Shown here in pieces: positions 1 to 24,017 of a stretch of 64,000 nt of DNA (within the stretch, counting starts at the first letter, position 1; each line of letters begins with the position of its first letter). The translations under genes and the position numbers were made by a program. The notes beneath the pieces were generated by a model, which did no database searches, was not told where the DNA came from, and saw only the letters and a list, made by a program, of their open reading frames with translations. Origin of the DNA: Selaginella moellendorffii (taxonomy: Eukaryota; Plantae; Lycopodiophyta); contig NW_003314303.1 in assembly GCF_000143415.4 (NCBI RefSeq), positions 434,460-498,459 on the forward strand, in the 5' to 3' direction.

Positions 1-2199
1 TAGAGTCCATGATGATCGCATCCCATGAAATCACGCCACTGTCAGAAAAGAGCTCCGTGAAACTTGGTAAATTTACGAGCTTCCTCCAATGTTTGCATAC
101 GCTCCTCACCTTGATAACGCCTGAAATAGGAAGCCTTAGAAAGATGGCTTCCAGAACCTCTTCTGGCAGGCACAAGATCCTCTTCATTATTGAATGGTAC
201 CCTAACAATCTTTACTTCGTCTTTATATATAACCAAGATTACCTTTTCGTAAACCATGGTTATCATCAAAATAAGATCCGAATATTCACACATAAAATCC
301 GGTTGGACTATTCAAAGGATAGAGTGGGGTTATAAATCTTTGCACTCCTAGATGCAGTTGTGTTGATTGAGGGGTGTTTAAGAAGTGAGGAGATCTCCAG
401 CTGAAAGTAACAAGCATTAAAAAAGTTGTAACAAAATGAAACTAAATCTTACCATTCTTGATATTTACACAACTGTCAATCTCCAACTGTTTGTAACTGC
501 CCTCACATGTCGTTTTATATATATATTCCGTTTTCAGAATTCTTGTGTATGAATTGCTGAGCTTGCATCGGTCAGGAAAGGCAGGGATTTGCATTGGACT
601 GGAAGACAGCAATCTAAACAAAACACGCAAGCATGCGCACAAACAGTGTTGTGGGGGCGGCAAACGCAAATCAATCGATTCAATGAAAACCCTTCAAGCA
701 TCATCCGGTCTTTAATAATTCATTCCAATGTGACAAATCCCGCGAAGATGTACACATCGCTCCACATATTCTAGCCTAAACGCACTTATGCTCTTGATTC
801 TATCTGTCCGTGGAACGTGGGAAACTTCAGTGTGTGTTTGGATGGAACTCCCTGGCGCTTTGCAAATTGCCAGAAAGGCTGCCAATACAAATAAAAAAGT
901 AGGATGTTGATAGAGTGAAAATGAGTGCTGCCATGCAATGCAATGCTCATGACAACCTTGTGTGTTAGCGATTATTATTCCCTTGCCTTCCATTCTTCCC
1001 AAATCACAATTCTTTTCAATCTCGCAAAATCTCTCAATCCATTCTTTCCATCCCCCAAGTTGGTACAAAAGCAAAGATTCCCCCCTTTCCATTCTCTCCT
1101 TTATTTTTTGTTGCTTGTCACCGACTGTGTGACAATAGTATGAAGAGATATCGAAAAAATAGCTTGGGGATTGGTCCCGTGGACCCATGGGCGGTGCCGG
1201 CGGCCCCACCAACACGGTCCTCCCTGTCAGCATTGCTGACGTGTGACGGGGTCGACTGTTTCCTTTCGTCTCAGGCGCTTTCCAGTTGGGGCATATAGTT
1301 GTGCCCATCAACCTTTTCTTTAAATCAAAAGCGCGATTTCATACTAGAAAATAATTTCATGGTTTCTAAAGTGATAGTTTGCGATTCCATGGGCTGGAAA
1401 TGCAAAGATTCCACATGGTTTTAGAGGTTTTTGTAGAGATGAGGTGGATTAGGTTAGCAGACATTTTGGGTGCGAGCCTTCACATGGGGCCCTCGTGGCA
1501 ATTCCAACACGAATTCTAGTGGCCTTTCTTTTTTCTGAAAATGAGTATTATGCGCTATACAGTGACGGAATATTCGTTGTACTGGATACGATATATATAT
1601 ACGCCTTGCTTGAGGAGAGCTGGAGGTTTCTCTCAGTTTTTTTCATTGATCCATTGAGCGCGCTCGCGAGAGAGAAAAGGCGAGGAAGAAATCGATTAGG
1701 TTCTTCGGTGGCGAGAGAGATCCGGTAGCTCTCGCTTTGGATCGTTGGTCAAAGTTGTGAAGTGGTCGAAGGGAGTTTATGTGCATTCTTCCTGTTGGTT
1801 TTGGTCCGTCTGTGTGGTGGAGTGTATCGTCTGTGCTCTGCATTTTTTAGGAGCCAGGTCTATCTTGATCCACCGCTGGAAATTCTTTGATCCGCGATTG
1901 CGCTGCCTCGAGGCATCGCTCGCGCCAGTTTTGCTTTTTGCATATATCTTTCTTTCCCTCCTGGGATTGTTTGACAGACCCCGGGGTTTTGCGTTTCGAT
2001 TTTGTGCATAGTCGCGTCGAGAGGGATAAAGCTTCCAAGAAAATCGAAAAAAGAAAACATTTCGCCTGCGTGAGATTGATAGTGAGTCTGAGATCGATTT
2101 CGATCGAATCGATCCAAGTCCAGTATTCTAGTGTGCATAAACTCGCTCGTCCCAATCCCAATTTTGCTGTGTTGTATATTTTGCTTTGTTCTTAACATC

Positions 2200-5100
2200 A
2201 TGGGGAAGTGTTCTAGCAAAGAACGTGTTGGAAAAGCAATGGTCTCCAAGATCAATGCCGTCCAGAAATCTTCGGGGGCTTCGAGCTCGAATGACAACAA
2301 CAACAACAACAACAAATCCAACACAAAGCCACAGGTATGGATCATTCGGAAAACTTCTCCTTTCTCTCATTCCTTGTGTATCTCCAGTCCATTCCAAGCT
2401 CGAGTGGTAGCACCAGGGTCCAGGTACGATCAAGCCTTAAAAGACAATTTGGTGGATTCATAAAACATACTTCCAGGACAACAATTCTCCCAAGAATGTT
2501 GGGGTGGTGGTGCCACCAATCTCCATCCCTGCCCCTCCCGCCCCGGCTGTAGGCTCAAATATCCAACGAGGAGGCCCCGGCTCGGTGTCAGACAGATTCC
2601 ACGATGCACAAGAAGAACTCCCGGACTTCCCCACGCTCGACGCCCAAGGCAACGTCCCACCCGAGGAGCACCCAACTCCAAAGATGGGCTCCTCTTACAA
2701 GCAGCCATCCTCGTCGTCCCCAGCGTCGTCTCCCCAGGAAGTGAAAAAGATCCATTCCTACGCATACGTGGTGGCCCAAGCGCCACCATCCGCAAGTAAG
2801 TTGAGCTCGAGTTCTTCGTTTCCAGGTAAGTCGTCTAACCTCGAGGTCCTTAGCAGTAGTAATAGTAGCGCTGGTAGTTTCGGTAGAAGCCAGAGCCTTG
2901 AGACGTCTAGTAGAGCTAGCGAGACAACGTTTTCTCACACAACCACCAGAACACCATCGAAAACTCCAGAAACCGTCGTGAAGCCCGAGTTAGTTTCGAC
3001 TCAAACACCAAGTGCTAAGCCCGATCCTTACAAATCCGACTCGAAATATGCCAAGCCTGCTTCTACAACCAAGCTAGCTCCTGAATCAAAAACCAAAAGT
3101 GTTGAGACCATGAAGCCTGCCCCGGACACCAAAGGTAAGCCCATTAGTATCAAAGGTAACAAGCCGCCTCCTCCGGTTCAAGAGAAGGCCTCACCGAAAG
3201 CCAAGTCTCCGCCTAAGGCCAAGGCTTCCCCGACGCCAGTAAGAGTTACAGAGCCTGCGATGCAAAACCGCAAAGAAGAGAAAGCTGCCGGCGTTTCTCG
3301 TCGTGGCTTTGTTCTCGAGGACTGGGAACTTGTCTCCAAAGCCACTGAAACACCGGACGACAAACAAAAGGTGAGTGACATCTTTTTCGAGATCTGCTTA
3401 TATAACTTTGATGAACCAGGCATCAAGAACAGCAAATACAGAGACCACAAAAGCTGGGCCGGATAGGAAAGCAGTGGATAGTCTAGGAAAACCAGGTGGC
3501 GCGATCAGGCCTCAAGCGGGATCTGATGTATCATCAGAAAACCGAGTAGGAAAACAGGCAGCCCCCCCGGAGATTATAAAAGAACAGAAGGCCAGGGAGA
3601 TCCCAGCGATGGAGAAACGTTCATCACATTCTAAAGCAGCAACAGCAAAAAAAGTCAAAGCTACACCGGAAGTGCATGTGACAGCAACTGAGCCGGGAAG
3701 TGATAACTCCATGTCGAGCTTCAGTGGACCGTCTGATTCATCAAAAGTTGGCGAGGAAAAACAGCATGCTCAAAAGCGTGAAGCTGCTCAAGTTGGCGCT
3801 GGAACGAAGAGAAATTCGGGACAGGAGGAGCCAGTAAACATTGCGAAAGAAGTACCAGGTAATGCTACAATCAAGGATGTTACAAGGGATTTTGACAAGA
3901 AAACTCCACAAGGAGCTCAGAACAAACGAGAAGATGATACGCCAAAGCAGGAAGCTAAGATAGATCAGATCGGCATTGGCACATCGGTAACAACTTTAGG
4001 AGAGATACAAGAGAAACCACAAGCAATTGCCGCTCTGCGTAAGGAAGAAAAGGCACCTGTGCCACAGGAAGCGCCAATATCAGCTACAGTGGCAGATGCC
4101 ACATCCAAATCAAATCTTGATGTGCCTACGGACAAAGCGCAGCACCGGGCGATAGCTCCATATGCGATAGTGAAGCGGGAAAATGATGATTCGTGCGTGG
4201 AGGAAAAGCCCGCTGACAAATTTACAATGAAATTGGAAGACAACGTAGAGAAGCCAGCCGTTTCTGAGCATGAGCTCAAGCTACCAGACAATTTTTACGG
4301 TGCTCAGACAATTGCAGCTGCACAGAACGTACAAGTCGCGACTCCAGCAGAAATGCAAGTGCTATTGGACATATATCCTGAGACTGTGCAAAGAAATGAG
4401 GAGCAGACTGCAAGTGACGTTTTCCTGGATCCAAAAGCCCCTGTACCTTTGGAATACTTAGCAGGACTAGTCGAACACGTCATACGTACCACAACAGAGG
4501 ACCATGAAAACGTGACACCGCCCCAAATAAAGAGAAGTGCGCATCCCAACCAAGGAAAGGACAACAGAAAAGAAAGAGACGAAATGGTTTCGGAGGGCCT
4601 GCCCGTTCCCAAAGTCGTACAAGAAACATCGAAGGCCGTCGAGTTACAACAAGCCACGCCTTCAGAAGCCATGCCTGTGGTTAAAAAGAAGGCTGCAAGG
4701 GAGGCAATACCCGAGCCTCCAGCAGCAATACCTCCAACCCCGGAAAACAAGGAAAAAGAGAGCCATGACGCAGCCAAGTTGGCTGTAGAGCATGCTGAGG
4801 CCGAGGAGAGTGATCCCAAGGCGATTGTGAAGGAGGGAGAAAAGGTGGCAGACCAAGAAATTAAGAGGTCCCCGCTGGATTCCACACACGCGACAGATTC
4901 TGTGGTGAAGGAGACAGCAGCTCCTGCCAGTGACGATTTTGCTCAGCGAGTGGCACAGGAGAAGAAAGTCAGGGAGCTACAGATTTCTGAACGTGAGCTC
5001 GAGCTGCCTGTCCCAGTAGTCTCGCAGCACGCACAGCAGCACGTCAAGGAGCAGATACAAGCTGTACTAGAGGATGCAAAGGATGCCAAGGAGGTGGAAC

Positions 5101-8100
5101 AAGCTGAGCCAATAACAGCTCTAGCAGCAATGCCCGTGGCCGACGAGGTCTTGCCCGCAAAAGACAAACCTGAGAAGGCCAAGGTGGCTGTGGACGACCA
5201 GGTGGAGCATTCTGACACCCAGGAGAGTGCTCCAGAGCTGATCGTGGAGGAAGAAAAAGTGGCGGAGAGAGCCGTGCCGGATTCCACGCAGGCGATGGAT
5301 CCCATGGTAGAGGACACACTGGCAGCAGCTGCCAGTCTAGACATTCCCAAACAAGTAGCAGAGGAGGTAATCAATGTCGAGGAGCAAGTTTCTGAACGTG
5401 GGCACCAGCTGCTCGTCCCAGGAGAAAAAGTCCCACAGCCCACAGGCAAGGCTGTTAAGGAGCCACATGCTGTGCCTAAGGCAGTTCCTGAGGCTGCAAA
5501 GGAGGTGGAACTGGCCGAGCCACCTGCAGCTCCAGCAGCAATGCCTGCGGTCGAGAATGTATTTCCCGCACACAACGAAATCAAGGAGGAAGAGAGCATT
5601 GAGACGGCCGACGTGGCTGTGGAAGACAAGGAGGAGAATGCTGACGACAAGGAGAGTGTTCCAGATGCGATCGTAAAGGAGGGAGAAAAGTTGGCAGAGC
5701 CAGATATTGAGAGTCCTGTGCCAGAATACATGCATGCAACGGAACCCGTGCTGGAGACACTGCTAGCAGCCCCATCAAGAGAAGACATTCACGAGCAAGT
5801 GCCAGAGGAGGAAATCAAAGTCAAGGAGCCACAACAAGTTTCCAAACGTGAGATCAAAGAAGATGTCCAGCAGGCTGCGGACGAGGCTTTCCAAAAGACA
5901 GGCGAGCCTGAGGCCGTGCCTGAGAAAGCTGACGAGGCCGCTAAGAAAATGGAACTGGCCGAGCCAGTCGGAGCTCCAGCAGCAACGTCTGCAGTGGATG
6001 ACGTTTTGCCCACACAGGACGAAATCAAGGAGGAAGGGGGCATAGAGCCAGCTGCTGTGCACGACCAGGTGGAGAATGGTCACGCCGGAGAGAGTACTCC
6101 AGACGCGATCGTGGAGGAGGGAGAAAAGTTGATGGAGCCAGGGATCGAGAGTGCTCTGCTGGATTCCATGCATGTGGCAGATCCCGTTATGGAGGACACA
6201 CAGGCAGCAGCTCCTGCTAGTGAACACATTACCAGGCAAGTGGAAGATGAAGAAATCAAAGTCGAGGAGCCACAACAACTTTCCAAACGAAAGCTGAAGC
6301 TGCCCGTCCCAATAGAAGAACTCCCACACACGACGAACGAAACCGTCCAGGAGCCAGAGGCTGTGGCTGAGGTCGTTCCCGGGCCAGAGGCCGTGCCTGC
6401 GACTGCTGAAGAACCTGACCTGGAGGTGGAAACGGCCGAGCCACTCGTAGCTCAAGTACCAACCACCACAGTGGATGCCGTCTTACCCGCACACAAGGAA
6501 ATCGAGGCCGAAGAGAGCATAGAGCCGGCCGAGGGGGCTGTGGATAACCAAGTGGAGAATGTCGAGCCCAGGGAGAGTGCTTCAGTCGCGGTCCTGGAGG
6601 AGGGAGAAAAGTTTGCGGTGCCAGAGATCGAGAGTGGTGCACCGGATTCCATGCATGCGACAGATCCCATGGTGGAGGACACACAGCGAGCATCTCCTTC
6701 CAGTGAAGACATTCACGAGGTCGTGGAAGAGGAGCAAACCAAAGTCGATGTGCCACAGCAAGTTTCCGAACGCGAGGTTGAGCTCCCCATTCCAAGAGAA
6801 GAACTCCCAGAGTCGGCGAAGGAAGCCGTCCAGGAGCCACAGCCTGTGGCTGAGGCCGTTCCCGGGCCAGAGGCCGTGCCTGAGGCTGCTGAGGAACTTG
6901 CCCAGGAGGTGGAACTGGCCGAGCCACTCGTAGCTCAAGTACCAACCACCACAGTGGATGCCGTCTTACCCGCACACGAGGAAATCGAGGCCGAAGAGAG
7001 CATAGAGCCGGCCGAGGGGGCTGTGGATGACCAGGTGGAGAATGTCGAGCCCAGGGAGAGTGCTTCAGTCGCGGTCCTGGAGGAGGGAGAAAATTTGGCG
7101 GTGCCAGAGATCGAGAGTGGTGCACCGGATTCCATGCATGCGACAGATCCCATGGTGGAGGACACACAGAGAGCATCTCCTGCCAGTGAAGACATTCACG
7201 AGGTCGTGGAAGACGAGCAAACCAAAGTCGATGTGCCACAGCAAGTTTCCGAACGCGAGGTTGAGCTTCCCATTCCAGTAGAACAACTCCAAGAGTCGGC
7301 GAAGGAAGCCGTCCAGGAGCCACAGCCTGTGGCTGAGGCCGTTCCCGGGACAGAGGCCGTGCCTGAGGCTGCTGAGGAACTTGCCCAGGAGGTGGAACTG
7401 GCCGAGCCACTCGTAGCTCAAGTACCAACTGCCACAGTGGATGCCGTCTTACCCGCACACGAGGAAATCGAGGCCGAAGAGAGCATAGAGCCGGCCGAGG
7501 TGGCTGTGGATGACCAGGTGGAGAATGTCGAGCCCAGGGAGAGTGCTGCAGTCGCGGTCCTGGAGGAGGGAGAAAAGTTGGCGGTGCCAGAGATCGAGAG
7601 TGGTGCACCAGATTCCATGCATGCGACAGATCCCATGGTGGAGGACACACAGAGAGCATCTCCTGCCAGTGAAGACATTCACAAGGTCGTGGAAGAGGAG
7701 AAAACCAAAGTCGATGTGCCACAGCGAGTTACCGAACGCGAGGTTGAGCTTCCCNNNNNNNNNNNNNNNNNNNNNNNNNNNNNNNNNNNNNNNNNNNNNN
7801 NNNNNNNNNNNNNNNNNNNNNNNNNNNNNNNNNNNNNNNNNNNNNNNNNNNNNNNNNNNNNNNNNNNNNNNNNNNNNNNNNNNNNNNNGCCACTCGTAGC
7901 TCAAGTACCAACCACCACAGTGGATGCCGTCTTACCCGCATTCGAGGAAATCGAGGCCGAAGAGAGCATAGAGCCGGCCGAGGGGGCTGTGGATGACCAG
8001 GTGGAGAATGTCGAGCCCAGGGAGAGTGCTTCAGTCGCGGTCCTGGAGGAGGGAGAAAAGTTGGCGGTGCCAGAGATCGAGAGTGGTGCACCGGATTCCA

Positions 8101-11100
8101 TGCATGCGACAGATCCCATGGTGGAGGACACACAGAGAGCATCTCCTGCCAGTGAAGACATTCACGAGGTCGTGGAAGACGAGCAAACCAAAGTTGATGT
8201 GCCACAGCAAGTTTCCGAACGCGAGGTTGAGCTCCCCATTGCAGTAGAAGAACTCCCAGAGTCGGTGAACGAAGCCGTCCAGGAGCCACAGCCTGTGGCT
8301 GAGGCCGTTCCCGGGACAGAGGCCGTGCCTGAGGCTGCTGAGGAACTTGCCAAGGAGGTGGAACTGGCCGAGCCACTCGTAGCTCAAGTACCAACTGCCA
8401 CAGTGGATGCCGTCTTACCCGCACGCGAGGAAATCAAGGCCGATGAGAGCATAGAGCCGGCCGAGGGGGCTGTGGATGACCAGGAGGAGAATGTCGAGCC
8501 CAGGGAGACTGCTTCAGTCGCGATCCTGGAGGAGGGAGAAACGTTGGCGGTGCCAGAGATCGAGAGTGGTGCACCGGATTCCATGCATGCGACAGATCCC
8601 ATGGTGGAGGACACACAGGGAGCATCTCCTGCCAGTGAAGACATTCACGAGGTCGTGGAAGAGGTGAAAACCAAAGCCGATGTGCCACAGCGATTTTCCG
8701 AACGCGAGGTTGAGCTTCCCATTCCAGTAGAACAACTCCAAGAGTCGGCGAAGGAAGCCGTCCAGGAGCCACAGCCTGTGGCTGAGGCCGTTCCTGGGCC
8801 AGAGGCTGTGCCTGAGGCTGCTGAGGAACCTGCCCAGGAGGTGGAACTGGCCGAGCTACTCGTAGCTCAAGTACCAACCACCACAGTGGATGCCGTCTTA
8901 CCCGCACACGAGGAAATCGAGGCCAAAGAGAGCATAGAGCCGGCCGAGGGGGCTGTGGATGACCAGGTGGAGAATGTCGAGCCCAGGGAGAGTCCTGCAG
9001 TCGCGGTCCTGGAGGAGGGAGAAAAGTTGGCGGTGCCAGAGATCGAGAGTGGTGCACCGGATTCCATGCATGCGACAGATCCCATGGTGGAGGACACACA
9101 GAGAGCATCTCCTGCCAGTGAAGACATTCACGAGGTCGTGGAAGACGAGCAAACCAAAGTCGATGTGCCACAGCATGTTTCTGAACGCGAGGTTGAGCTT
9201 CCCATTCCAGTAGAAGAACTCCCAGAGTCGGTGAACGAAGCCGTCCAGGAGCCACAGCCTGTGGCTGAGGCCGTTCCCGGGACAGAGGCCGTGCCTGAGG
9301 CTGCTGAGGAACTTGCCCAGGAGGTGGAACTGGCCGAGCCACTCGTAGCTCAAGTACCAACTGCCACAGTGGATGCCGTCTTACCCGCACACGAGGAAAT
9401 CGAGGCCGATGAAAGCATAGAGCCGGCCGAGGTGGCTGTGGATGAGCAGGTGGAGAATGTCGAGCCCAGCGAGACTGCTTCAGTCGCGATCCTGGAGGAG
9501 GGAGAAAAGTTGGCAGTGCAAAAGATCGAGAGTGGTGCACCGGATTCCATGCATGCGACAAATCCCATGGTGGAGGACACACAGGGAGCATCTCCTGCCA
9601 GTGAAGACATTCACGAGGTCGTGGAAGACGAGCAAACCAAAGTCGATGTGCCACAGCATGTTTCTGAACGCGAGGTTGAGCTTCCCATTCCAGTAGAAGA
9701 ACTCCCAAAGTCGGCAAAGGAAGCCGTCCAGGAGCCACAGCCTGTGGCTGAGGCCGTTCCTGGGACAGAGGCCGTGCCTGAGGCTGCTGAGGAACTTGCC
9801 CAGGAGATGGAACTGGCCGAGCCACTCGTATCTCAAGTACCAACCACCACGGTGGATGCTGTCTTACCCGCACACGAGGAAATCGAGGCCGAAGAGAGCA
9901 TAGAGCCGGCCGAGGGGGCTGTGGATGACCAGGTGGAGAATGTCGAGCCCAGGGAGAGTGCTTCAGTCGCGGTCCTGGAGGAGGGAGAAAAGTTGGCGGT
10001 GCCAGAGATCGAGAGTGGTGCACCGGATTCCATGCATGCGACAGATCCCATGGTGGAGGACACACAGAGAGCATCTCCTGCAAGTGAAGACATTCACGAG
10101 GTCGTGGAAGACGAGCAAACCAAAGTCGATGTGCCACAGCAAGTTTCCGAACGCGAGGTTGAGCTTCCCATTCCAGTAGAACAACTCCAAGAGTCGGCGA
10201 AGGAAGCCGTCCAGGAGCCACAGCCTGTGGCTGAGGCCGTTCCCGGGACAGAGGCCGTGCCTGAGGCTGCTGAGGAACTTGCCCAGGAGGTGGAACTGGC
10301 CGAGCCACTCGTAGCTCAAGTACCAACTGCCACAGTGGATGCCGTCTTACCCGCACACGAGGAAATCGAGGCCGAAGAGAGCATAGAGCCGGCCGAGGTG
10401 GCTGTGGATGACCAGGTGGAGAATGTCGAGCCCAGGGAGAGTGCTGCAGTCGCGGTTCTGGAGGAGGGAGAAAAGTTGGCGGTGCCAGAGATCGAGAGTG
10501 GTGCACCAGATTCCATGCATGCGACAGATCCCATGGTGGAGGACACACAGAGAGCATCTCCTGCCAGTGAAGACATTCACGAGGTCGTGGAAGACGAGCA
10601 AAGCAAAGTTGATGTGCCACAGCAAGTTTCCGAACGCGAGGTTGAGCTTCCCATTCCAGTAGAACAACTCCAAGAGTCGGCGAAGGAAGCCGTCCAGGAG
10701 CCACAGCCTGTGGCTGAGGCCGTTCCCGGGACAGAGGCCGTGCCTGAGGCTGCTGAGGAACTTGCCCAGGAGGTGGAACTGGCCGAGCCACTCGTAGCTC
10801 AAGTACCAACTGCCACAGTGGATGCCGTCTTACCCGCACACGAGGAAATCGAGGCCGAAGAGAGCATAGAGCCGGCCGAGGGGGCTGTGGATGACCAGGT
10901 GGTGAATGTCGAGCCCAGGGAGAGTGCTGCAGTCGCGGTCCTGGAGGAGGGAGAAAAGTTGGCGGTGCCAGAGATCGAGAGTGGTGCACCGGATTCCATG
11001 CATGCGACAGATCCCATGGTGGAGGACACACAGAGAGCATCTCCTGCCAGTGAAGACATTCACAAGGTCGTGGAAGAGGAGAAAACCAAAGTCGATGTGC

Positions 11101-14100
11101 CACAGCGAGTTACCGAACGCGAGGTTGAGCTTCCCATTCCAGTAGAACAACTCCAAGAGTCGGCGAAGGAAGCCGTCCAGGAGCCACAGCCTGTGGCTGA
11201 GGCCGTTCCCGGGACAGAGGCCGTGCCTGAGGCTGCTGAGGAACCTGCCCAGGAGGTGGAACTGGCCGAGCCACTCGTAGCTCAAGTACCAACCACCACA
11301 GTGGATGCCGTCTTACCCGCACACGAGGAAATCGAGGCCAAAGAGAGCATTGAGCCGGCCGAGGGGGCTGTGGATGACCAGGTGGAGAATGTCGAGCCCA
11401 GGGAGAGTGCTTCAGTCGCGGTCCTGGAGGAGGGAGAAAAGTTGGCGGTGCCAGAGATCGAGAGTGGTGAACCGGATTCCATGCATGCGACAGATCCCAT
11501 GCTGGAGGACACACAGAGAGCATCTCCTGCCAGTGAAGACATTCACGAGGTCGTGGAAGACGAGCAAAGCAAAGTTGATGTGCCACAGCAAGTTTCCGAA
11601 CGCGAGGTTGAGCTTCCCATTCCAGTAGAAGAACTCCCAGAGTCGGCGAAGGAAGCCGTCCAGGAGCCACAGCCTGTGGCTGAGGCCGTTCCCGGGACAG
11701 AGGCCGTGCCTGAGGCTGCTGAGGAACTTGCCCAGGTGGTGGAACTGGCCGAGCCACTCGTAGCTCAAGTACCAACCACCACAGTGGATGCCGTCTTACC
11801 CGCACACGAGGAAATCGAGGCCGAAGAGAGCATAGAGCCGGCCGAGGGGGCTGTGGATGACCAGGTGGAGAATGTCGAGCCCAGGGAGAGTGCTTCAGTC
11901 GCGGTCCTGGAGGAGGGAGAAAAGTTGGCGGTGCCAGAGATCGAGAGTGGTGCACTGGATTCCATGCATGCGACAGATCCCATGGTGGAGGACACACAGG
12001 GAGCATCTCCTGCCAGTGAAGACATTCACGAGGTCGTGGAAGACGAGCAAACCAAAGTCGATGTGCCACAGCAAGTTTCCGAACGCAAGGTTGAGCTCCC
12101 CATTCCAGTAGAAGAACTCCCAGAGTCGGCAAAGGAAGCCGTACAGGAGCCACAGCCTGTGGTTGAGGCCGTTCCCGGGACAGAGGCCGTGCCTGAGGCT
12201 GCTGAGGAACTTGCCCAGGTGGTGGAACTGGCCGAGCCACTCGTAGCTCAAGTACCAACCACCACAGTGGATGCCGTCTTACCCGCACACGAGGAAATCG
12301 AGGCCGAAGAGAGCATAGAGCCGGCCGAGGGGGCGGTGGATGACCAGGTGGAGAATGTCGAGCCCAGGGAGAGTGCTTCAGTCGCGGTCCTGGAGGAGGG
12401 AGAAAAGTGGGCGGTGCCAGAGATCGAGAGTGGTGCACTGGATTCCATGCATGCGACAGATCCCATGGTTGAGGACACACAGAGAGCATCTCCTGCCAGT
12501 GAAGACATTCACGAGGTCGTGGAAGACGAGCAAAGCAAAGTCGATGTGCCACAGCATGTTTCTGAACGCGAGGTTGAGCTTCCCATTCCTGTAGAAGAAC
12601 TCCCAGAGTCGGTGAACGAAGCCGTCCAGGAGCCACAGCCTGTGGCTGAGGCCGTTCCCGAGACAGAGGCCGTGCCTGAGGCTGCTGAGGAACTTGCCCA
12701 GGAGGTGGAACTGGCCGAGCCACTCGTAGCTCAAGTGCCAACTGCCACAGTGGATGCCGTCCTACCCGCACACGAGGAAATCGAGGCCGATGAAAGCATA
12801 GAGCCGGCCGAGGGGGCTGTGGATGACCAGGTGGAGAATGTCGAGCCCAGGGAGAGTGCTTCAGTCGCGGTCCTGGAGGAGGGAGAAAAGTTGGCGGTGC
12901 CAGAGATCGAGAGTGGTGCACCGGATTCCATGCATGCGACAGATCCCATGGTGGAGGACACACAGAGAGCATCTCCTGCCAGTGAAGACATTCACGAGCT
13001 TGTGGAAGACGAGCAAAGCAAAGTTGATGTGCCACAGCAAGTTTCCGAACGCGAGGTGGAGCTTCCCATTCCAGTAGAAGAACTCCCAGAGTCGGCAAAC
13101 GAAGTCGTCCAGGAGCCACAGCCTGTGGTTGAGGCCGTTCCCGGGACAGAGGCCGTGCCTGAGGCTGCTGAGGAACCTGCCCAGGAGGTGGAACTGGCCG
13201 AGCCACTCGTAGCTCAAGTACCAACCGCCACAGTGGATGCCGTCTTGCCCGCACACGAGGAAATCGAGGCCGAAGAGAGCATAGAGCCGGCCGAGGTGGC
13301 TGTGGATGACCAGGTGGAGAATGTCGAGCCCAGGGAGAGTGCTTCAGTCGCGATCCTGGAGAAGGGAGAAAAGTTGGCGGTGCCAGAGATCGACAGTGGT
13401 GCACCGGATTCCATTTCTGCGACAGATCCCATGGTGGAGGACACACAGGGAGCATGTCCTGCCAGTGAAGACATTCACGAGCTTGTGGAAGAGGAGCAAA
13501 TCAAATTCGATGTGCCACAGCAAGTTTCCGAACGCGAGGTCGAGCTTCCCATTCCAGTAGAAGAACTCGCAGAGTCGGCAAACGAAGTCGTCCAGGAGCC
13601 ACAGCCTGTGGCTGAGGCCGTTCCTGGGCCAGAGGCCGTGCCTGAGGCTGCTGAAGAACCTGCCCAGGAGGTGGAACTGGCCGAGCCACTCGTAGCTCAA
13701 GTACCAACCGCCACAGTGGATGCTGTCTTACCAGCACACAAGGAAATCGAGGCCGAAGAGAGCATAAAGCCGGCCGAGGTGGCTGTGGATGACCAGGTGG
13801 AGAATGTCGAGCCCAGGGAGAGTGCTTCAGTCGCGATCCTGGAGGAGGGAGAAAAGTTGGCGGTGCCAGAGATCGACAGTGGTGCACCGGATTCCATGCC
13901 TGCGACAGATCCCATGGTGGAGGACACACAGGGAGCATGTCCTGCCAGTGAAGACATTCACGAGCTTGTGGAAAAGGAGCAAACCAAAGTCGATGTGCCA
14001 CAGCAANNNNNNNNNNNNNNNNNNNNNNNNNNNNNNNNNNNNNNNNNNNNNNNNNNNNNNNNNNNNNNNNNNNNNNNNNNNNNNNNNNNNNNNNNNNNNN

Positions 14101-17100
14101 NNNNNNCCAGGAGCCAGAGCCTGTTGCTGAGGCCGTTCCCGGGCCAGAGGCCGTGCCTGAGGTTGCTGAGGAACCTGCCCAGGAGGTGGAACTGGCCGAG
14201 CCACTCGTAGCTCAAGTACCAACTGCCACAGTGGATGCTGTCTTACCAGCACACAAGGAAATCGAGGCCGAAGAGAGCATAGAGCCGGCCGAGGTGGCTG
14301 TGGATGACCAGGTGGAGAATGTCGAGCCCAGGGAGAGTGCTTCAGTCGCGATCCTGGAGGAGGGAGAAAAGTTGGCGGTGCCAGAGATCGACAGTGGTGC
14401 ACCGGATTCCATTGCTGCGACAGATCCCATGGTGGAGGACACACAGGGAGCATGTCCTGCCAGTGAAGACATTCACGAGCTTGTGGAAGAGGAGCAAACC
14501 AAAGTCGATGTGCCACAGCAAGTTTCCGAACGCGAGGTCGAGCTTCCCATTCCAGTAGAAGAACTCCCAGAGTCGGCGAACGAAGTCGTCCAGGAGCCAG
14601 AGCCTGTTGCTGAGGCCGTTCCCGGGCCAGAGGCCGTGCCTGAGGTTGCTGAGGAACCTGCCCAGGAGGTGGAACTGGCCGAGCCACTCGTAGCTCAAGT
14701 ACCAACTGCCACAGTGGATGCTGTCTTACCAGCACACAAGGAAATCGAGGCCGAAGAGAGCATAGAGCCGGCCGAGGTGGCTGTGGATGACCAGGTGGAG
14801 AATGTCGAGCCCAGGGAGAGTGGTTCAGTCGCGATCCTGGAGGAGGGAGAAAAGTTGGCGGTGCCAGAGATCGACAGTGGTGCACCTGATTCCATGCATG
14901 CGACAGATCCCATGGTGGAGGACACACAGGGAGCATGTCCTGCCAGTGAAGACATTCACGAGCTTGTGGAAAAGGAGCAAACCAAAGTCGATGTGCCACA
15001 GCAAGTTTCCGAACGCGAGGTCGAGCTTCCCATTCCAGTAGAAGAACTCCCAGAGTCGGCAAACGAAGCCGTCCAGGAGCCAGAGCCTGTTGCTGAGGCC
15101 GTTCCCGGGACAGAGGCCGTGCCTGAGGCTGCTGAGGAACTTGCCCAGGAGGTGGAACTGGCCGAGCCACTCGTAGCTCAAGTACCAACGGCCACAGTGG
15201 ATGCCGTCTTACCCGCACACGAGGAAATCGAGGCCGAAGAGAGCATAGAGCCGGCCGAGGGGGCTGTGGATGACCAGGTGGAGAATGTCGAGCCCAGGGA
15301 GAGTGCTTCAGTCGCGGTCCTGGAGGAGGGAGAAAAGTTGGCGGTGCCAGAGATCGAGAGTGGTGCACCGGATTCCATGCATGCAACAGATCCCATGGTG
15401 GAGGACACACAGGGAGCATGTCCTGCCAGTGAAGACATTCACGAGCTTGTGGAAGAGGAGCAAACCAAAGTCGATGTGCCACAGCAAGTTTCCGAACGCG
15501 AGGTCGAGCTTCCCATTCCAGTAGAAGAACTCCCAGAGTCGGCAAACGAAGTCGTCCAGGAGCCACAGCCTGTGGTTGAGGCCGTTCCCGGGACAGAGGC
15601 CGTGCCTGAGGCTGCTGAGGATCTTGCCCAGGAGGTGGAACTGGCCGAGCCACTCGTAGCTCAAGTACCAACTGCCACAGTGGATGCCGTCTTACCCGCA
15701 CACGAGGAAATCGAGGCCGAAGAGAGCATAGAGCCGGCCGAGGGGGCTGTGGATGACCAGGTGGAGAATGTCGAGCCCAGGGAGAGTGCTTCAGTCGCGA
15801 TCCTGGAGAAGGGAGAAAAGTTGGCGGTGCCAGAGATCGACAGTGGTGCACCGGATTCCATTTCTGCGACAGATCCCATGGTGGAGGACACACAGGGAGC
15901 ATGTCCTGCCAGTGAAGACATTCACGAGCTTGTGGAAGAGGAGCAAACCAAAGTCGATGTGCCACAGCAAGTTTCCGAACGCGAGGTCGAGCTTCCCATT
16001 CCAGTAGAAGAACTCCCAGAGTCGGCAAACGAAGCCGTCCAGGAGCCAGAGCCTGTTGCTGAGGCCGTTCCCGGGCCAGAGGCCGTGCCTGAGGTTGCTG
16101 AGGAACCTGCCCAGGAGGTGGAACTGGCCGAGCCACTCGTAGCTCAAGTACCAACTGCCACAGTGGATGCTGTCTTACCAGCACACAAGGAAATCGAGGC
16201 CGAAGAGAGCATAGAGCCGGCCGAGGTGGCTGTGGATGACCAGGTGGAGAATGTCGAGCCCAGGGAGAGTGGTTCAGTCGCGATCCTGGAGGAGGGAGAA
16301 AAGTTGGCGGTGCCAGAGATCGACAGTGGTGCACCTGATTCCATGCATGCGACAGATCCCATGGTGGAGGACACACAGGGAGCATGTCCTGCCAGTGAAG
16401 ACATTCACGAGCTTGTGGAAAAGGAGCAAACCAAAGTCGATGTGCCACAGCAAGTTTCCGAACGCGAGGTCGAGCTTCCCATTCCAGTAGAAGAACTCCC
16501 AGAGTCGGCAAACGAAGTCGTCCAGGAGCCAGAGCCTGTTGCTGAGGCCGTTCCCGGGACAGAGGCCGTGCCTGAGGCTGCTGAGGAACTTGCCCAGGAG
16601 GTGGAACTGGCCGAGCCACTCGTAGCTCAAGTACCAACCGCCACAGTGGATGCTGTCTTACCAGCACACAAGGAAATCGAGGCCGAAGAGAGCATAGAGC
16701 CGGCCGAGGTGGCTGTGGATGACCAGGTGGAGAATGTCGAGCCCAGGGAGAGTGCTTCAGTCGCGATCCTGGAGGAGGGAGAAAAGTTGGCGGTGCCAGA
16801 GATCGACAGTGGTGCACCGGATTCCATTTCTGCGACAGATCCCATGGTGGAGGACACACAGGGAGCATGTCCTGCCAGTGAAGACATTCACGAGCTTGTG
16901 GAAGAGGAGCAAACCAAAGTCGATGTGCCACAGCAAGTTTCCGAACGCGAGGTCGAGCTTCCCATTCCAGTAGAAGAACTCCCAGAGTCGGCAAACGAAG
17001 TCGTCCAGGAGCCACAGCCTGTGGCTGAGGCCGTTCCCGGGCCAGAGGCCGTGCCTGAGGCTGCTGAGGAACCTGCCCAGGAGGTGGAACTGGCCGAGCC

Positions 17101-19312
17101 ACTCGTAGCTCAAGTACCAACCGCCACAGTGGATGCTGTCTTACCAGCACACAAGGAAATCGAGGCCGAAGAGAGCATAGAGCCGGCCGAGGTGGCTGTG
17201 GATGACCAGGTGGAGAATGTCGAGCCCAGGGAGAGTGCTTCAGTCGCGATCCTGGAGGAGGGAGAAAAGTTGGCGGTGCCAGAGATCGACAGTGGTGCAC
17301 CGGATTCCATTTCTGCGACAGATCCCATGGTGGAGGACACACAGGGAGCATGTCATGCCAGTGAAGACATTCACGAGCTTGTGGAAGAGGAGCAAACCAA
17401 AGTCGATGTGCCACAGCAAGTTTCCGAACGCGAGGTCGAGCTTCCCATTCCAGTAGAAGAACTCCCAGAGTCGGCAAACGAAGTCGTCCAGGAGCCACAG
17501 CCTGTGGTTGAGGCCGTTCCCGGGACAGAGGCCGTGCCTGAGGCTGCTGAGGAACTTGCCCAGGAGGTGGAACTGGCCGAGCCACTCGTAGCTCAAGTAC
17601 CAACTGCCACAGTGGATGCCGTCTTACCCGCACACGAGGAAATCGAGGCCGAAGAGAGCATAGAGCCGGCCGAGGGGGCTGTGGATGACCAGGTGGAGAA
17701 TGTCGAGCCCAGGGAGAGTGCTTCAGTCGCGGTCCTGGAGGAGGGAGAAAAGTTGGCGGTGCCAGAGATCGAGAGTGGTGCACCGGATTCCATGCATGCA
17801 ACAGATCCCATGGTAGAGGACACACAGGGAGCATCTCCTGCCAGTGAAGACATTCACGAGCTTGTGGAAGAGGAGCAAACCAAAGTCGATGTGCCACAGC
17901 AAGTTTCCGAACGTGAGGTCGAGCTTCCCATTCCAGTAGAAGAACTCCCAGAGTCGGCGAACGAAGTCGTCCAGGAGCCACAGCCTGTGGCTGAGGCCGT
18001 TCCCGGGCCAGAGGCCGTGCCTGAGGCTGCTGTGGAACCTGCCGAGCCACTCGTAGCTCAAGTACCAACCGGCACAGTGGATGCCGTCTTGCCCGCACAT
18101 GAGGAAATCGAGGCCGAAGAGAGTATAGAGCCGGCTGAGGTGGCTGTGGATGAGCAGGTGGAGAATGTCGAGCCCAGGGAGAGTGCTTCAGTCGCGATCC
18201 TGGAGGAGGGAGAAAAGTTGGCGGTGCCAGAGTTCGAGAGTGGTGCACCGGATTCCATGCATGCGACAGAGCCCATGGTGGAGGACACACAGGGAGGATC
18301 TCCTGCCAGTGAAGACATTCACGAGCACGTGGAAGAGGAGGAAGTCAATGTCGAGAAGGGACAACAAGTTTCTGAGCGCGGGCTTGGGCTGGCATTCCGA
18401 GTAGAAGAACTCCCACAGGTGACGAACGAAGCCGTCCAGGAGCCAGAGACTGTTCTTGAGGCCGTTCCCGAGCGAGAGGCCGTGCCTGAGGCTGCTGAAG
18501 AGGCTGCCAAGGGGGTGGAACTGGCCGAGCCAGTCGCAGCTCAAGTACCAACCACCACAGTGGACGCCGTCTTACGTGCACACGATGAAATCAAGGAGGA
18601 AGAGAGCATGGAGCCGGGCGAGGTTGCTGTGAATGACCAGGTGGAGGTTGTCCAGCCCAGGGAGAGTGCTTCAGTCGCGATCGTGGAGGATGGAGAAAAG
18701 TCGGCGGTGCCAGAGATTGAGAGTGCTGCTCCAAATTCCACTCGTGCGTTAGATCCCGTGGTGGACACACAGGGAGCAGCTCCTGCCAGTGAAGACATTC
18801 CCGAGCAAGTGGAAGAGGTGGAAGCCAATGTCGAAGAGCCACAGCAAGTTGAGCTCGAGCTGCCTGTCGAGAATGTCCCATGGGAGGCTGTTCAGGAGGC
18901 TTGGGACATCCCAAAGCATGAATCTGGTATTCAGGCTTTTGAGCTGGTGGCTGCCGAAAAAGATGTTTCCTTTTCACCAGCAACGGCCAGAGGCGTTCGT
19001 GATCCGACAGTTGACCCTTCTGGAGGAGGCGGTGGTGGCGGTGGCCTAGACATGAAAGTGAAGGATGAAAATCCATCTGGGGAATTCAGTGTTGTTGCAG
19101 TGACAACAATGACATGGGCAGATGGTAAGGAGCAGGTTTTGGGAGCTGTTGCTGTTCATCACGTGAAGGTGTTGTCATCTACTCTAGATGACGATTCTTG
19201 GGAGGAAGTGGCAGCTTCCGAACAATATGAACCAAATGGTCTTGGTAGCAGTAATGGTGGGACTCACAAGTTGGATTTGAACATCATTGAGGACTATGCT
19301 GGAGGCAAATAG
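2200..19312 (+). CDS. Giant (~5,600 aa) Glu/Ala/Val/Pro-rich tandem-repeat protein; exons 2200-2334, 2388-2423, 2477-3370, 3420-19312
   Basis: ATG at 2200 gives MGKCSSK. Three GT..AG introns (2335-2387, 2424-2476, 3371-3419) join in frame to the ORFs at 2504-3466 and 3375-14210. The frame continues in ORF 14153-19312 after the 100-N gap. No stops in the coding frame of the sequenced repeat units. Confidence 0.8.
7755..7888. other. Assembly gap (134 N) that preserves repeat register and frame
   Basis: N-run; flanking units remain 483 apart. Confidence 0.99.
14007..14106. other. Assembly gap (100 N, probably of unknown true size)
   Basis: Round 100-N run; flanking units are 515 apart and the frame shifts, so the true copy number is unknown. 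Confidence 0.97.
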
Positions 19313-19379: not shown

Positions 19380-19839
19380 TGAAGTTATCAAACTGCAAAG
19401 TCGGACAAGCCAATCCAGATGTGTACCATTCTCTGCTCACATCATCAACGGGGTGCTGGAAGGCTACGATGGTTTCCGAAGCGTTGCTGAAGTGTAGGTG
19501 TAGAACATATTTTGCCGTGAGTCTGTTCCAAAAGGGGCGCTCAAGATAGAACTCTAACAGCAATAGAAACTGCAGAATGTTTTGCACAACGAAAATGCCA
19601 AAGTTGTACTCAAAAACTGCTACAATACACTGCCAGTCGGTGGGAAAATCATAATCACTGACCATCCGCACCAGAAGGCAGCCGTCGATCAAGATCTGAG
19701 GATGCTAGTTTTCACTGGAGGGAAGCAGAAGAGTACAAGCGAGTGGAAAGAGCTGCTCACGTCGCAAGGCTTCTCAAACGTCAACTTCAAACCTCTCCCC
19801 GCAGTCAAGTTTGCAGCTGTCATCGAGGCCGTCAAGTAA
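19380..19839 (+). pseudogene. Internally deleted O-methyltransferase copy
   Basis: Short pieces match 22845-23340 and 23495-23580, plus a near-complete last exon (LKNCYNTLPVGGKIII...VIEAVK*). Confidence 0.85.
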
Positions 19840-19929
19840 GAAAAGTCTCTGAATGCAATAAATCCTTTGTCATCTTGTTGGTGCACGCTCATATGGCCAC
19901 CTACCAAGAGACCCATTCTTACTTCTCTA

Positions 19930-20560
19930 GGATGACCGGGTATTGACGGCAACCCGAACCGGATGGACGTGATTGGGAAAGGCGAGCAAGTGCGTGAGGG
20001 CCAAAAGCGGAGCTTTTGGGTTTAGGGTAAGCCGACCCCAGTCCAACTCGTCTCCTAGGGGACATTCCCGGAGCAAAGCACAAGCCCCTGCTCACAAAAG
20101 CCGTGGCAAATGGAGCGTAAGCGATACAATGACGGGGACTCTTCCAGAGAGGAGGAGGTTTTATTGGAGCCCTCAAGAAGGAGGATACCACCAAAGCAAT
20201 AGAGCTTCCTTAAAGAACATATAAAAACAAGAAAAGCCGCGGTACCTTGTTTTACCATGGCTTTGTTAACTTATTATGTGTGCCAGCGTGGGAGAAAACA
20301 CGTCCACGATCAGGTACGTGAACTTCCAGGTCCAGTCTGTCTTTGGGCATCCCAATGTAGCATTACATGGTAGTACAGGACTTAACCTACTTTAAGGCTC
20401 ACAGTGGAATAGTGGCATAATGGAGCTTTTGAGTGACACAGAAAAGAGAAAAATCTTACCTGACTGTCATGTTGACCCTGTCCAGGATCTTTGTACCTGA
20501 GAACGTTATCAGTGACAGTGAGTGACAAATGCAGGAGGAAAAAATATTTTCGAACGTAAA
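19930..20560. pseudogene. Degenerate duplicate of the small Zn-finger gene (+) and the 3' half of TIM21 (-)
   Basis: Colinear similarity to ~24030-25090 (e.g. ggcaacccgaaccgg, aaacacgtccacgatcaggtacgtgaacttccaggtcc, aaaatcttacctgactgtc) with many deletions. Confidence 0.85.
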
Positions 20561-22340: not shown

Positions 22341-22698
22341 GAGTATGGACCCTTACAAAAGAAGAGATTGCAAAGTAAGTTTTAAAATAAAGACTTCATC
22401 AAAAGTTATTGTTGATGGTGCAATGCCACTGGTGTTAACATTAGATTAGCATACCAAATCAGCTAGAAATAGAAAAACTGTACAATACAAGTTTTTCATT
22501 TCAAAGGGTGCATAATAAGAGAAGATCAAGCTTGCAAAGTTTGACCCGCAACTGCACTTTTCTATTTAACATTTTTTAAGTCTAAAATCCAGTGGCCCAG
22601 ACATGAAAGCGAAGGATGAAAATCCATCGAGGGAGTTACTGTCAACAATGACATGGGCAGATGGTAAGGAGGAGGTTTCGGGAGCTGTTGGTGTCCAT

Positions 22699-22727
22699 CA
22701 CGTGAGGGTGTAACTCCGCCTTATAAA
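22699..22727 (+). promoter_or_regulatory. G-box (CACGTG 22699-22704) and TATA box (TATAAA 22722-22727) of the OMT gene
   Basis: Motifs lie 40-70 bp upstream of the OMT ATG at 22768. Confidence 0.6.
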
Positions 22728-22767
22728 GGTCATAATCATTAAGTTTCCTATTGTGAACAACCTTACT

Positions 22768-23890: not shown

Positions 23891-24017
23891 CAAAGACCTC
23901 TGCATAATGGACCAAGTCTCACCCATGAAAAAATAAATAAATAAATTCTGTAAGAGATCATACCCATCTCTAATAAGAATCCTGCTTCTCTAAGATAATA
24001 ACCATCGGATAATAGTT

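What the first reader, a model, noticed from the sequence alone, without database searches (positions are those of the whole stretch)
2200..19312. Giant (~5,600 aa or more) acidic 161-aa-repeat protein with an N-terminal dual-acylation motif
Seen: small exons missed by the ORF track supply an N-terminus MGKCSSK (Gly2, Cys4, Ser6, Lys7). This is followed by a basic S/P/K-rich region and a ~16-kb exon of Glu/Val/Ala/Pro repeats, open across all sequenced copies. Known: MGxCxS(K) is the plant N-myristoylation plus S-acylation consensus (as in CDPKs), and PEVK/MAP-like low-complexity repeats are typically disordered. Inference: a membrane-tethered, very long polyanionic spacer or spring, possibly cation-binding or linked to stress or the cytoskeleton. 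I recognise no family for the repeat.
Basis: partly seen in the sequence, partly recalled or inferred. Interest (0 to 1): 0.82.

Follow-up and report, generated by a model that had tools for sequence, protein, structure and literature searches.

The report
Giant acidic repeat protein, lipid-anchor start

Summary
The window is Selaginella moellendorffii. The gene is already deposited as EFJ19067.1 / D8S8M4 (hypothetical protein, 5,519 aa), and RefSeq splits it at the gaps into "titin, partial" and "titin-like".

- **Transcript:** contigs from four runs of four studies lack all three short introns (53, 53 and 49 nt). They join the MGKCSSK exon to the giant exon.
- **Gaps:** both are compatible with one reading frame. 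Gap 1 keeps the 483-bp period exactly. Gap 2 stands for 68 nt modulo 483.
- **Size:** the minimum product is 5,641 aa, made of a basic 355-aa head (pI about 9.5-10) and an exon-4 chain of pI 4.05 and net charge about -1,060.
- **Constraint:** the frame is kept open, but the unit sequence is only weakly constrained (dN/dS 0.4-0.8 for old pairs, about 1 for young ones).
- **Fold:** AlphaFold gives no structure for the unit.
- **Relatives:** Pfam, PDB, the Atlas and a search of 1.84 billion representatives found only S. moellendorffii fragments.
- **N-terminus:** GKCSSK fits the published NMT motif GKXXS(K). Acylation itself was not tested.
- **New here:** the last ~270 nt of coding sequence lie in a decayed O-methyltransferase copy, so this is a young chimeric gene.
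- **Caveat:** an unplaced scaffold carries one in-frame TAG.

Best reading: a membrane-tethered polyanionic disordered chain. The function is inferred only.

The parts
1652..2199 (+). 5' UTR (minimum extent), with a single uORF of 23 codons at 1779-1850
   Evidence: RNA contigs start at 1652-1754 in four runs. The uATG scan found one uORF. There is an in-frame stop at 2089 upstream of the ATG.
2200..2334 (+). Exon 1 coding part, 45 aa: MGKCSSKERVGKAMVSK... It has G2, K3, C4, S6 and K7, with 6 basic and 1 acidic residue in the first 25; pI 10.1
   Evidence: identical to the start of P0003 and P0007
2335..2387 (+). Intron 1, 53 nt, GT..AG, phase 0
   Evidence: In the contigs, 46 letters stand between window 2285 and 2385 against 99 in the genome. 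The tool skipped 2286-2327 as a simple AAC repeat, so the joint is inferred by arithmetic. It agrees with P0003.
2388..2423 (+). Exon 2, 36 nt, SIPSSSGSTRVQ
   Evidence: a piece at 2385-2418 in X1, X2 and X3; P0003
2424..2476 (+). Intron 2, 53 nt, GT..AG
   Evidence: The joint 'skips 53' is seen in all four runs.
2477..3370 (+). Exon 3, 298 aa. Basic S/P/K-rich region (pI 9.5); exons 1-3 together hold 12 SP/TP sites. It contains LEDWELV.
   Evidence: RNA contigs are continuous over 2472-3368, so the 30-nt 'intron' of the JGI model is not removed.
3371..3419 (+). Intron 3, 49 nt, GT..AG
   Evidence: The joint 'skips 49' is seen in all four runs.
3420..19312 (+). Exon 4, 15.9 kb, coding up to the stop TAG at 19310-19312
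   Evidence: RNA contigs cover 3418 to about 6460. The rest rests on the open frame and the public models.
3420..4652 (+). Non-repeat part of exon 4, 411 aa, near-neutral charge, no family
4653..6437 (+). Four old, diverged units D1-D4 (453, 411, 444 and 477 nt)
   Evidence: Alignment. dN/dS against other units is 0.40-0.84 for D1-D3 and about 1.1-1.5 for D4 against the canonical units.
6438..18526 (+). Homogenised core of the array: 25 units, 24 of 483 bp (161 aa) and one of 465 bp. Mean pairwise identity is 94.6% over the 21 clean 483-bp units. There are two sub-families, before and after about 13200.
7755..7888 (.). Assembly gap 1 (134 N); period and frame are preserved
14007..14106 (.). 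Assembly gap 2 (100 N); stands for 68 nt modulo 483 and is in frame once corrected
18527..18859 (+). Last unit, diverged and truncated (111 aa)
18860..19309 (+). C-terminal tail, 150 aa, with a Gly8 run, a predicted beta-hairpin of low confidence, and NVPWEAV and DDDSWEEV
   Evidence: no family
19041..19312 (+). Part of the tail that lies inside a decayed O-methyltransferase copy. 19041-19172 matches the stretch just upstream of the intact OMT ORF (82.6% over 132 nt), including its donor-like GATG|GTAAGG.
19395..19999 (+). Remains of the same decayed OMT copy (3' pieces, colinear with 22873-24091), downstream of the stop
   Evidence: Pfam Methyltransf_2 E = 1.2e-8 for 19603-19836
20595..22330 (+). 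Second decayed copy of [one repeat unit + tail piece + OMT], with stops
22592..23905 (+). Apparently intact O-methyltransferase gene: the reference copy for the recruited tail, not part of the giant gene
   Evidence: Pfam Methyltransf_2 and Dimerisation

Best explanation
This is a real, transcribed and spliced gene of Selaginella moellendorffii (SELMODRAFT_444278). Its product has two parts.

1. A 355-residue basic head. Its first residues, Met-Gly-Lys-Cys-Ser-Ser-Lys, suit co-translational removal of Met1, N-myristoylation of Gly2 by NMT, and then S-acylation of Cys4. Six basic residues among the first 25 would add electrostatic binding to acidic lipids.
2. A chain of at least 5,286 residues. 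Most of it is about 30 copies of a Glu/Ala/Val/Pro-rich 161-residue unit with no aromatic residues and about -37 charge per unit.

Shown here: the transcript structure at the 5' end, the open frame, the composition, the predicted lack of fold, and the lack of relatives.

Inferred: the head pins the protein to the cytosolic face of a membrane, most likely the plasma membrane. The tail then acts as a tethered polyelectrolyte with a contour length of about 2 micrometres. It would work as a steric and electrostatic brush or spacer and as a high-capacity, low-affinity sink for Ca2+ and other cations. Selection would act on charge, length and an open frame rather than on the exact sequence.

The gene is young and chimeric. 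The array grew by unequal exchange, with a homogenised centre and diverged edges. The stop codon and the last ~90 residues come from a decayed O-methyltransferase copy.

My odds: real expressed gene 0.9; full-length translation 0.65; lipid anchoring 0.55; brush or cation-sink function 0.3.
For: Splicing and expression.
- Contigs of four runs from four studies lack all three introns and run from the 5' UTR into the array.
- 20 runs from 11 studies hold the 5' region.
- The RefSeq model is identical to mine over 1,559 aa.

Frame maintenance.
- 0 stops in 21 units with 143 variant alleles, P = 0.006 if neutral.
- All unit lengths are multiples of 3.
- Both gaps are compatible with one frame.
- Old unit pairs give dN/dS 0.40-0.84 at dS 0.4-1.0.

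Disorder.
- AlphaFold2 with a 30-row unit alignment gives pTM 0.11 and no secondary structure.
- The charge-hydropathy test places every part except the tail on the disordered side, and the unit has no F, W or Y.

Anchor.
- GKCSSK fits GKXXS plus K7, the motif derived for G-myristoylation of K3 substrates.
- NMT prefers S6 and K7, and ARF6 (GKVLSKIF) is a substrate.
- Acylated Cys residues commonly lie next to a myristoyl-Gly, and the myristoylated acidic cation-binding protein AtPCaP1 is a plant precedent.

Polarity of charge: head pI 9.5-10 against exon 4 pI 4.05 and net charge -1,064.
Against: - No experiment shows acylation, location, cation binding or the protein itself.
- K3 is the less favourable context for NMT.
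- dN/dS is about 1 among young units, so the array sequence evolves almost freely.
- The gene has no detectable relative outside S. moellendorffii, and its 3' end is recycled from a decayed gene. Both fit a young gene of little consequence.
- The unplaced scaffold GL377978.1 carries one in-frame TAG in a unit. If real, that copy or allele is truncated.
- RNA cover beyond about 6460 and the 3' end were not tested. A donor-like GATG|GTAAGG at 19121-19130 could give a different C-terminus.
Confidence: 0.45

Rival explanations
1. Runaway repeat expansion in a young chimeric orphan gene. The mRNA is made and perhaps translated, but neither the length nor the sequence of the array serves a purpose. 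The open frame survives because the expansion is recent and because unequal exchange spreads intact units.
For: - dN/dS is about 1 between young units, and variable columns are spread 45/38/49 over the three codon positions.
- Only S. moellendorffii proteins match among 1.84 billion representatives.
- The tail and the stop codon come from a decayed OMT copy, with a second decayed copy nearby.
- An unplaced scaffold has a TAG in a unit.
Against: - The absence of stops is unlikely if neutral (P = 0.006).
- Diverged units D1-D3, at dS 0.4-1.0, are still open, in frame and keep the composition, with dN/dS 0.40-0.84.
- The mRNA is found in 11 studies.
- The N-terminus matches a specific enzyme motif.
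Confidence: 0.3
2. A soluble giant polyanion of the cytosol or nucleus. The MGK start is not acylated, or only weakly. The basic SP/TP-rich head binds microtubules, nucleic acid or another anionic surface, and the acidic array is a projection domain, as in MAP2, tau or MAP1B.
For: - K3 lowers NMT efficiency.
- The head is basic and Pro/Ser/Lys-rich, with 12 SP/TP sites.
- S-acylation cannot be predicted from sequence.
Against: - S6 and K7 are exactly the residues that rescue K3 substrates.
- No microtubule-binding or DNA-binding family was detected.
Confidence: 0.15
3. An ATG8-binding tether or selective-autophagy receptor. Three of the five native Trp residues sit in acidic W-x-x-V motifs (LEDWELV, NVPWEAV, DDDSWEEV) that resemble AIM/LIR motifs.
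For: The motif contexts are listed. The core W-x-x-[LIV] with acidic flanks is the AIM/LIR pattern (my own knowledge of the ATG8-interacting motif).
Against: - Short motifs arise easily by chance. With L/I/V at about 22% of residues, 3 or more of 5 has a probability of about 0.07 (my arithmetic).
- Two of the three lie in the C-terminal tail; DDDSWEEV lies in the OMT-derived stretch 19041-19312, NVPWEAV upstream of it.
- No orthologues exist to test conservation.
Confidence: 0.05
4. A pseudogene or an assembly artefact: the array is mis-assembled, or the true sequence is interrupted.
For: - The array contains two gaps.
- An 8.4-kb unplaced scaffold full of gaps holds about 17 more units, one with a TAG.
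Against: - Units carry distinct variant patterns and fall into two sub-families rather than being collapsed copies.
- Both gaps keep the unit register.
- The 15.9-kb frame is open.
- Spliced RNA exists.
Confidence: 0.05

Closest known systems
PCaP1 / PCaP2 (DREPP family; plant plasma-membrane-associated cation-binding proteins, also called MDP25 / MAP18)
   Same: An N-myristoylated Gly2 with a basic N-terminal stretch, followed by an acidic Glu/Val/Pro/Lys-rich disordered region. AtPCaP1 is listed as a myristoylated cation-binding protein in PMC3927097. Its composition and its microtubule and phosphoinositide binding are from my own knowledge.
   Different: No DREPP domain was detected. This protein is about 25 times longer, is built from 161-aa tandem units, has a Cys4 that PCaP1 lacks, and shows no sequence relationship.
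MARCKS / BASP1 (CAP-23) / GAP-43: animal acylated acidic disordered membrane proteins
   Same: An N-terminal fatty-acyl anchor plus a basic cluster, then a long Ala/Glu/Pro/Lys-rich acidic disordered chain (my own knowledge; not tested with tools).
   Different: Those proteins have 200-330 residues, no tandem repeats and are animal-specific. No homology was found in any search.
Titin PEVK region (the source of the RefSeq names 'titin, partial' and 'titin-like')
   Same: A Pro/Glu/Val-rich, disordered, repeated sequence that could act as an entropic spring. P+E+V+K make up 49% of the unit.
   Different: There are no Ig, fibronectin-III or kinase domains and no Pfam hit of any kind. The unit is Lys-poor and strongly anionic. 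The name is an automatic label, not evidence of kinship.
ARF6 and NCS1/hippocalcin N-termini (GK-starting NMT substrates)
   Same: The G2-K3-x-x-S6-K7 pattern. The published rule for G-myristoylation with K3 is GKXXS, helped by K7.
   Different: Only the first seven residues are comparable. Position 5 here is Ser rather than the hydrophobic residue that favours catalysis in ARF6. The published rule comes from human NMT peptide assays.

Membership tests
NMT substrates (N-myristoylated proteins), GK-starting class | Gly at position 2 after the initiator Met, at the true start codon | tested here: met
   ATG at 2200 is followed by GGG. An in-frame stop lies at 2089 with no ATG between. RNA contigs cover the start.
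NMT substrates (N-myristoylated proteins), GK-starting class | Ser at position 6 (GKXXS), with Lys at position 7 as a helper | tested here: met
   The sequence is G2 K3 C4 S5 S6 K7. The rule is taken and PMC7044312.
NMT substrates (N-myristoylated proteins), GK-starting class | No charged residue at position 5; a hydrophobic residue there is favourable | tested here: inconclusive
   Position 5 is Ser: uncharged, so tolerated, but not hydrophobic.
NMT substrates (N-myristoylated proteins), GK-starting class | Myristate actually attached | not testable with these tools
   This needs an NMT peptide assay, metabolic labelling or N-terminal proteomics.
S-acylated proteins | A Cys close to a membrane-targeting signal. 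No sequence consensus exists. | tested here: inconclusive
   Cys4 lies two residues from Gly2. PMC3927097 states that prediction from sequence is not feasible.
DREPP / PCaP (Pfam PF05558, accession quoted from memory) | Match to the DREPP domain profile | tested here: not met
   Pfam scans of residues 1-420 and 356-780, exon 3, 3420-5960, a unit and the tail at E up to 1-10 gave no DREPP hit.
Titin / PEVK | Immunoglobulin and fibronectin-III domains, a kinase domain, or a PEVK (PPAK) motif profile | tested here: not met
   No Pfam family reached its threshold in any part. The PDB profile search found nothing.
Intrinsically disordered polyanionic repeat proteins (a descriptive class, not a homology family) | No predicted stable fold, high net charge and low hydropathy | tested here: met
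   AlphaFold2 unit model: pTM 0.11 and no secondary structure. Unit |R| is 0.23 against a boundary of 0.134, with no aromatic residues.
Plant O-methyltransferases (Pfam Methyltransf_2), for the C-terminal tail only | The tail encodes an OMT domain | tested here: not met
   The tail shares DNA with the stretch upstream of the intact OMT ORF but gives no Pfam hit. The OMT domain remnants lie after the stop.

The most novel reading that the evidence does not exclude
The protein is made at full length and is fixed to a membrane by myristoyl-Gly2, palmitoyl-Cys4 and its basic head. That would make it, to my knowledge, much the longest lipid-anchored disordered polyanion described: about 600 kDa, about 2 micrometres of contour and about -1,000 charge. 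It would form a cytoplasmic polyelectrolyte brush that sets spacing and local cation activity at the membrane. It would also have been assembled within one lineage from a repeat expansion plus a tail captured from a decaying enzyme gene.
Probability: 0.3. Interest if true: 0.65.

Novelty: new variant of a known kind. Interest (0 to 1): 0.45.

Why it matters
If the anchor and the full-length product are real, this is a natural extreme of a design seen in much smaller proteins such as PCaP1, MARCKS and BASP1: a fatty-acyl and basic membrane anchor carrying an acidic disordered chain. It would be a useful test case for how the length and charge of a tethered disordered chain act at a membrane.

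It is also a clear example of how a very large gene can arise quickly. The array shows a gradient from old edge units to a homogenised centre. The coding end is borrowed from a decayed neighbouring gene.

On the practical side, the public records need correcting:
- The RefSeq names "titin" and "altered inheritance of mitochondria protein 21" have no basis.
- RefSeq splits one gene at the assembly gaps.
- The GenBank model removes a 30-nt stretch that the RNA keeps.

The limits are that the gene is an orphan of one species and that nothing about its function has been measured.

Tried and rejected
Searches that found nothing:
- Pfam on every part.
- A word-index protein search with the tail, for candidates of 954-3,034 aa.
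- The same with the first 1,000 residues of P0003, for candidates of 857-2,728 aa. It found only the query itself.
- The same with residues 1-640, for candidates of about 350-1,120 aa.
- ESM Atlas with the tail and with residues 1-770.
- A PDB profile search with the unit alignment.
- A paper search for the five accession numbers.
- Earlier findings of this scan, by words and by sequence.

The exhaustive search with window:18044-19309 returned three S. moellendorffii fragments. It also returned one bacterial surface protein at E = 1.4e-4 and 28% identity over 64 residues, which I take as a compositional match.

Readings I rejected:
- The joint "goes back 411" is not an extra unit. The 33 letters between its two sides are window 5901-5933, so the joint comes from ending my stretch at 5900.
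- The long minus-strand ORFs (up to 1,487 aa) are not an antisense gene. That frame has 4 stops in 21 units and dN/dS 1.47, and the GT..AG introns fix the transcript to the + strand.
- Titin kinship (see the membership test).

Attempts that failed:
- I tried to fill gap 2 from the unplaced scaffold GL377978.1. Its units are not colinear with the window and it has four gaps of its own.
- I did not use the model of the tail (pLDDT 39) for a fold search, because matches to such a model are meaningless.
- DNA for the 70%-identical second array (P0002) could not be fetched. P0007 is too long for the contig look-up.

Joined step: I handed no self-joined spliced model to any search tool. Searches across the splice junctions used the public protein P0003, which is identical to the spliced model. 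In scripts, exon translations were concatenated only to compare them with P0003 and P0007 and to compute composition.

Full report
**What is there.** Tandem Repeats Finder reports one array at 5950-18850, with period 483, 26.7 copies, 91% matches and no indels. ORF listing shows two very long + strand ORFs, 3375-14210 and 14153-19312, in different frames. Their translations are the same Glu/Val/Ala/Pro-rich 161-residue unit throughout.

**The gaps, tested first.** I anchored the units on a 20-mer, which gave 27 unit starts.
- All spacings are 483 bp except 477 and 465, both multiples of three, and 515 across gap 2.
- Gap 1 (7755-7888, 134 N) leaves the period at exactly 483 and the frame unchanged.
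- Gap 2 (14007-14106) is a conventional 100 N. The excess of 32 means it stands for 68 nt modulo 483. With that length, the codon register after the gap (position mod 3 = 2) returns to the register before it (mod 3 = 0).
- So the frame change between the two ORFs comes from the arbitrary gap length. Whole extra units hidden in either gap cannot be excluded.

**Gene model and transcription.**
- The sequence shows ATG at 2200 in a good context, with an in-frame stop at 2089 and no ATG between.
- GT..AG introns lie at 2335-2387, 2424-2476 and 3371-3419, all in phase 0.
- The 5' region is held by 20 public runs from 11 studies.
- I laid the contigs of four runs from four studies on 1600-5900. All four skip 2424-2476 and 3371-3419.
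- The first intron lies next to an AAC repeat that the tool masked, so I checked it by arithmetic. The contigs hold 46 letters where the genome has 99, which is a loss of 53. In X7 they hold 80 letters where the genome has 186, which is a loss of 106, or two introns.
- Because the contigs lack introns, they come from RNA. They start at 1652-1754 and run on into the array.
- The apparent joint "goes back 411" only reflects the end of my stretch at 5900. The 33 intervening letters are window 5901-5933.
- RNA cover beyond about 6460 and the 3' end could not be tested.

**Identity.**
- The exhaustive protein search returned only Selaginella moellendorffii entries.
- The gene is GenBank EFJ19067.1 / UniProt D8S8M4, "hypothetical protein SELMODRAFT_444278", 5,519 aa. 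It has the same MGKCSSK start and the same C-terminus.
- RefSeq breaks it at the gaps into XP_024540542.1 ("titin, partial", 1,559 aa) and XP_024540543.1 ("titin-like", 1,123 aa).
- XP_024540542.1 is identical to my model over its whole length. The GenBank model removes a 30-nt "intron" in exon 3 that the RNA contigs retain.
- No paper in the library names any of these accessions.

**The protein.**
- Minimum length is 355 + 5,218 + 45 + 23 = 5,641 residues.
- Exons 1-3 are basic (pI 9.5-10, net +17) and rich in Ser, Pro and Lys.
- Exon 4 has pI 4.05 and net charge -1,064.
- The unit has 37 Glu, 23 Val, 23 Ala and 17 Pro, and no Phe, Trp or Tyr.
- AlphaFold2 with an alignment of 30 units gives pTM 0.11 and no secondary structure. 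The last 261 residues give a mean pLDDT of 39, with only a weak hairpin.
- On the charge-hydropathy plot, every part except the 150-residue tail falls on the disordered side.

**Selection.**
- In 21 clean units, 132 columns vary (45, 38 and 49 by codon position). Mean identity is 94.6% and dN/dS is 0.76.
- No variant creates a stop, although 1.9% of possible transitions and 4.9% of possible transversions would. For the 143 observed alleles this gives P = 0.006 under neutrality.
- Three older units lie upstream of the array that TRF reports. With D4 they align to the canonical unit with in-frame gaps only.
- D1-D3 differ from other units by dS 0.4-1.0, with dN/dS 0.40-0.84. Young pairs are near 1.
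- So the frame, the charge and the composition are kept, while the sequence is only weakly constrained. This is common for disordered regions (my knowledge).
- The minus-strand ORFs are a by-product of codon make-up.

**A caveat from a second scaffold.** GL377978.1 is an unplaced 8,375-bp scaffold with four gaps and about 17 units, 97-99% like those of the window. One unit has TAG where the window's units have GAG or AAG. This may be a read error in a thin scaffold, or a truncated second allele or copy. A further array, about 70% identical, exists on a 17.5-kb contig (P0002). Its DNA could not be fetched.

**The N-terminus.**
[quoted passage not shown] ARF6 (GKVLSKIF) is a substrate (PMC7044312).
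- For substrates with K3 the derived motif is GKXXS. K3 is less favourable, and S6K7 is then all the more important (bioRxiv 10.1101/2021.06.22.449375).
- GKCSSK meets this motif. Position 5 is uncharged but not hydrophobic.
- Acylated cysteines commonly lie next to myristoylated glycines, but S-acylation cannot be predicted from sequence (PMC3927097).
- The anchor is therefore plausible and unproven.

**Origin of the 3' end (new here).**
- The tail region 19041-19172 matches, at 82.6%, the stretch just upstream of an intact O-methyltransferase ORF at 22592-22711. The match includes that stretch's ATG and a donor-like GATG|GTAAGG.
- Further pieces at 19395-19999 are colinear with the rest of that gene.
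- So the stop codon and the last ~90 residues of the giant protein are read from a decayed O-methyltransferase copy.
- A second decayed copy at 20595-22330 keeps one repeat unit, a piece of the tail and other OMT parts.
- The fusion of a repeat unit with the OMT 5' end therefore predates a local duplication, and the gene is a young chimera.

**What it is like.** By design it resembles plant PCaP1/PCaP2 and animal MARCKS, BASP1 and GAP-43: a fatty-acyl and basic anchor carrying an acidic disordered chain. It is about 25 times longer than these and is built from tandem units. It is a member of none of them. No DREPP, titin or other domain is detected.

**Verdict.** The gene is real but already deposited. 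The gene is an orphan with weak sequence constraint. Interest is moderate.

Noticed in passing
L001 (GL377978.1) 2979-2981: An unplaced 8.4-kb scaffold of the same array has an in-frame TAG where the window's units have GAG or AAG. This is either a read error or a truncated second allele or copy.
   Followed up: partly
window 19121-19130: The O-methyltransferase donor-like site GATG|GTAAGG is preserved inside the giant gene's coding tail. It could give an alternatively spliced C-terminus. Both public models read through it.
   Followed up: no
window 20595-22330: A decayed copy of [one repeat unit + tail piece + O-methyltransferase], with stops and deletions. It lies between the giant gene and the intact O-methyltransferase gene.
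   Followed up: partly
window 22592-23905: An apparently intact O-methyltransferase gene (Dimerisation + Methyltransf_2). A possible short first exon (MKAKDENPS...TWAD) could be spliced to ...DSYHMMLSLAESF. The exon structure was not verified.
   Followed up: partly
window 2797-2826: The GenBank model EFJ19067.1 removes 30 nt (LSSSSSFPGK) as an intron. RNA contigs and RefSeq keep them.
   Followed up: yes
window 1779-1850: There is a single upstream ORF of 23 codons in a 5' UTR of at least 520 nt.
   Followed up: partly
window 3211-3231, 18872-18883 and 19190-19201 (approximate): Three acidic W-x-x-V motifs (LEDWELV, NVPWEAV, DDDSWEEV) resemble ATG8-interacting motifs. Only five native Trp residues occur in the whole protein.
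   Followed up: partly
window 13827-18290, minus strand: ORFs of up to 1,487 aa lie on the opposite strand of the array. They are explained by the unit's codon make-up, not by a gene.
   Followed up: yes
window 21725-21872: A 46-bp tandem repeat of 3 copies lies in the decayed region between the two O-methyltransferase copies.
   Followed up: no
P0002 (XP_024523736.1, 17.5-kb contig): A second array in the same species, about 70% identical at protein level. Some of its units lack the central ~45 residues. This points to a small gene family or a diverged duplicate.
   Followed up: partly
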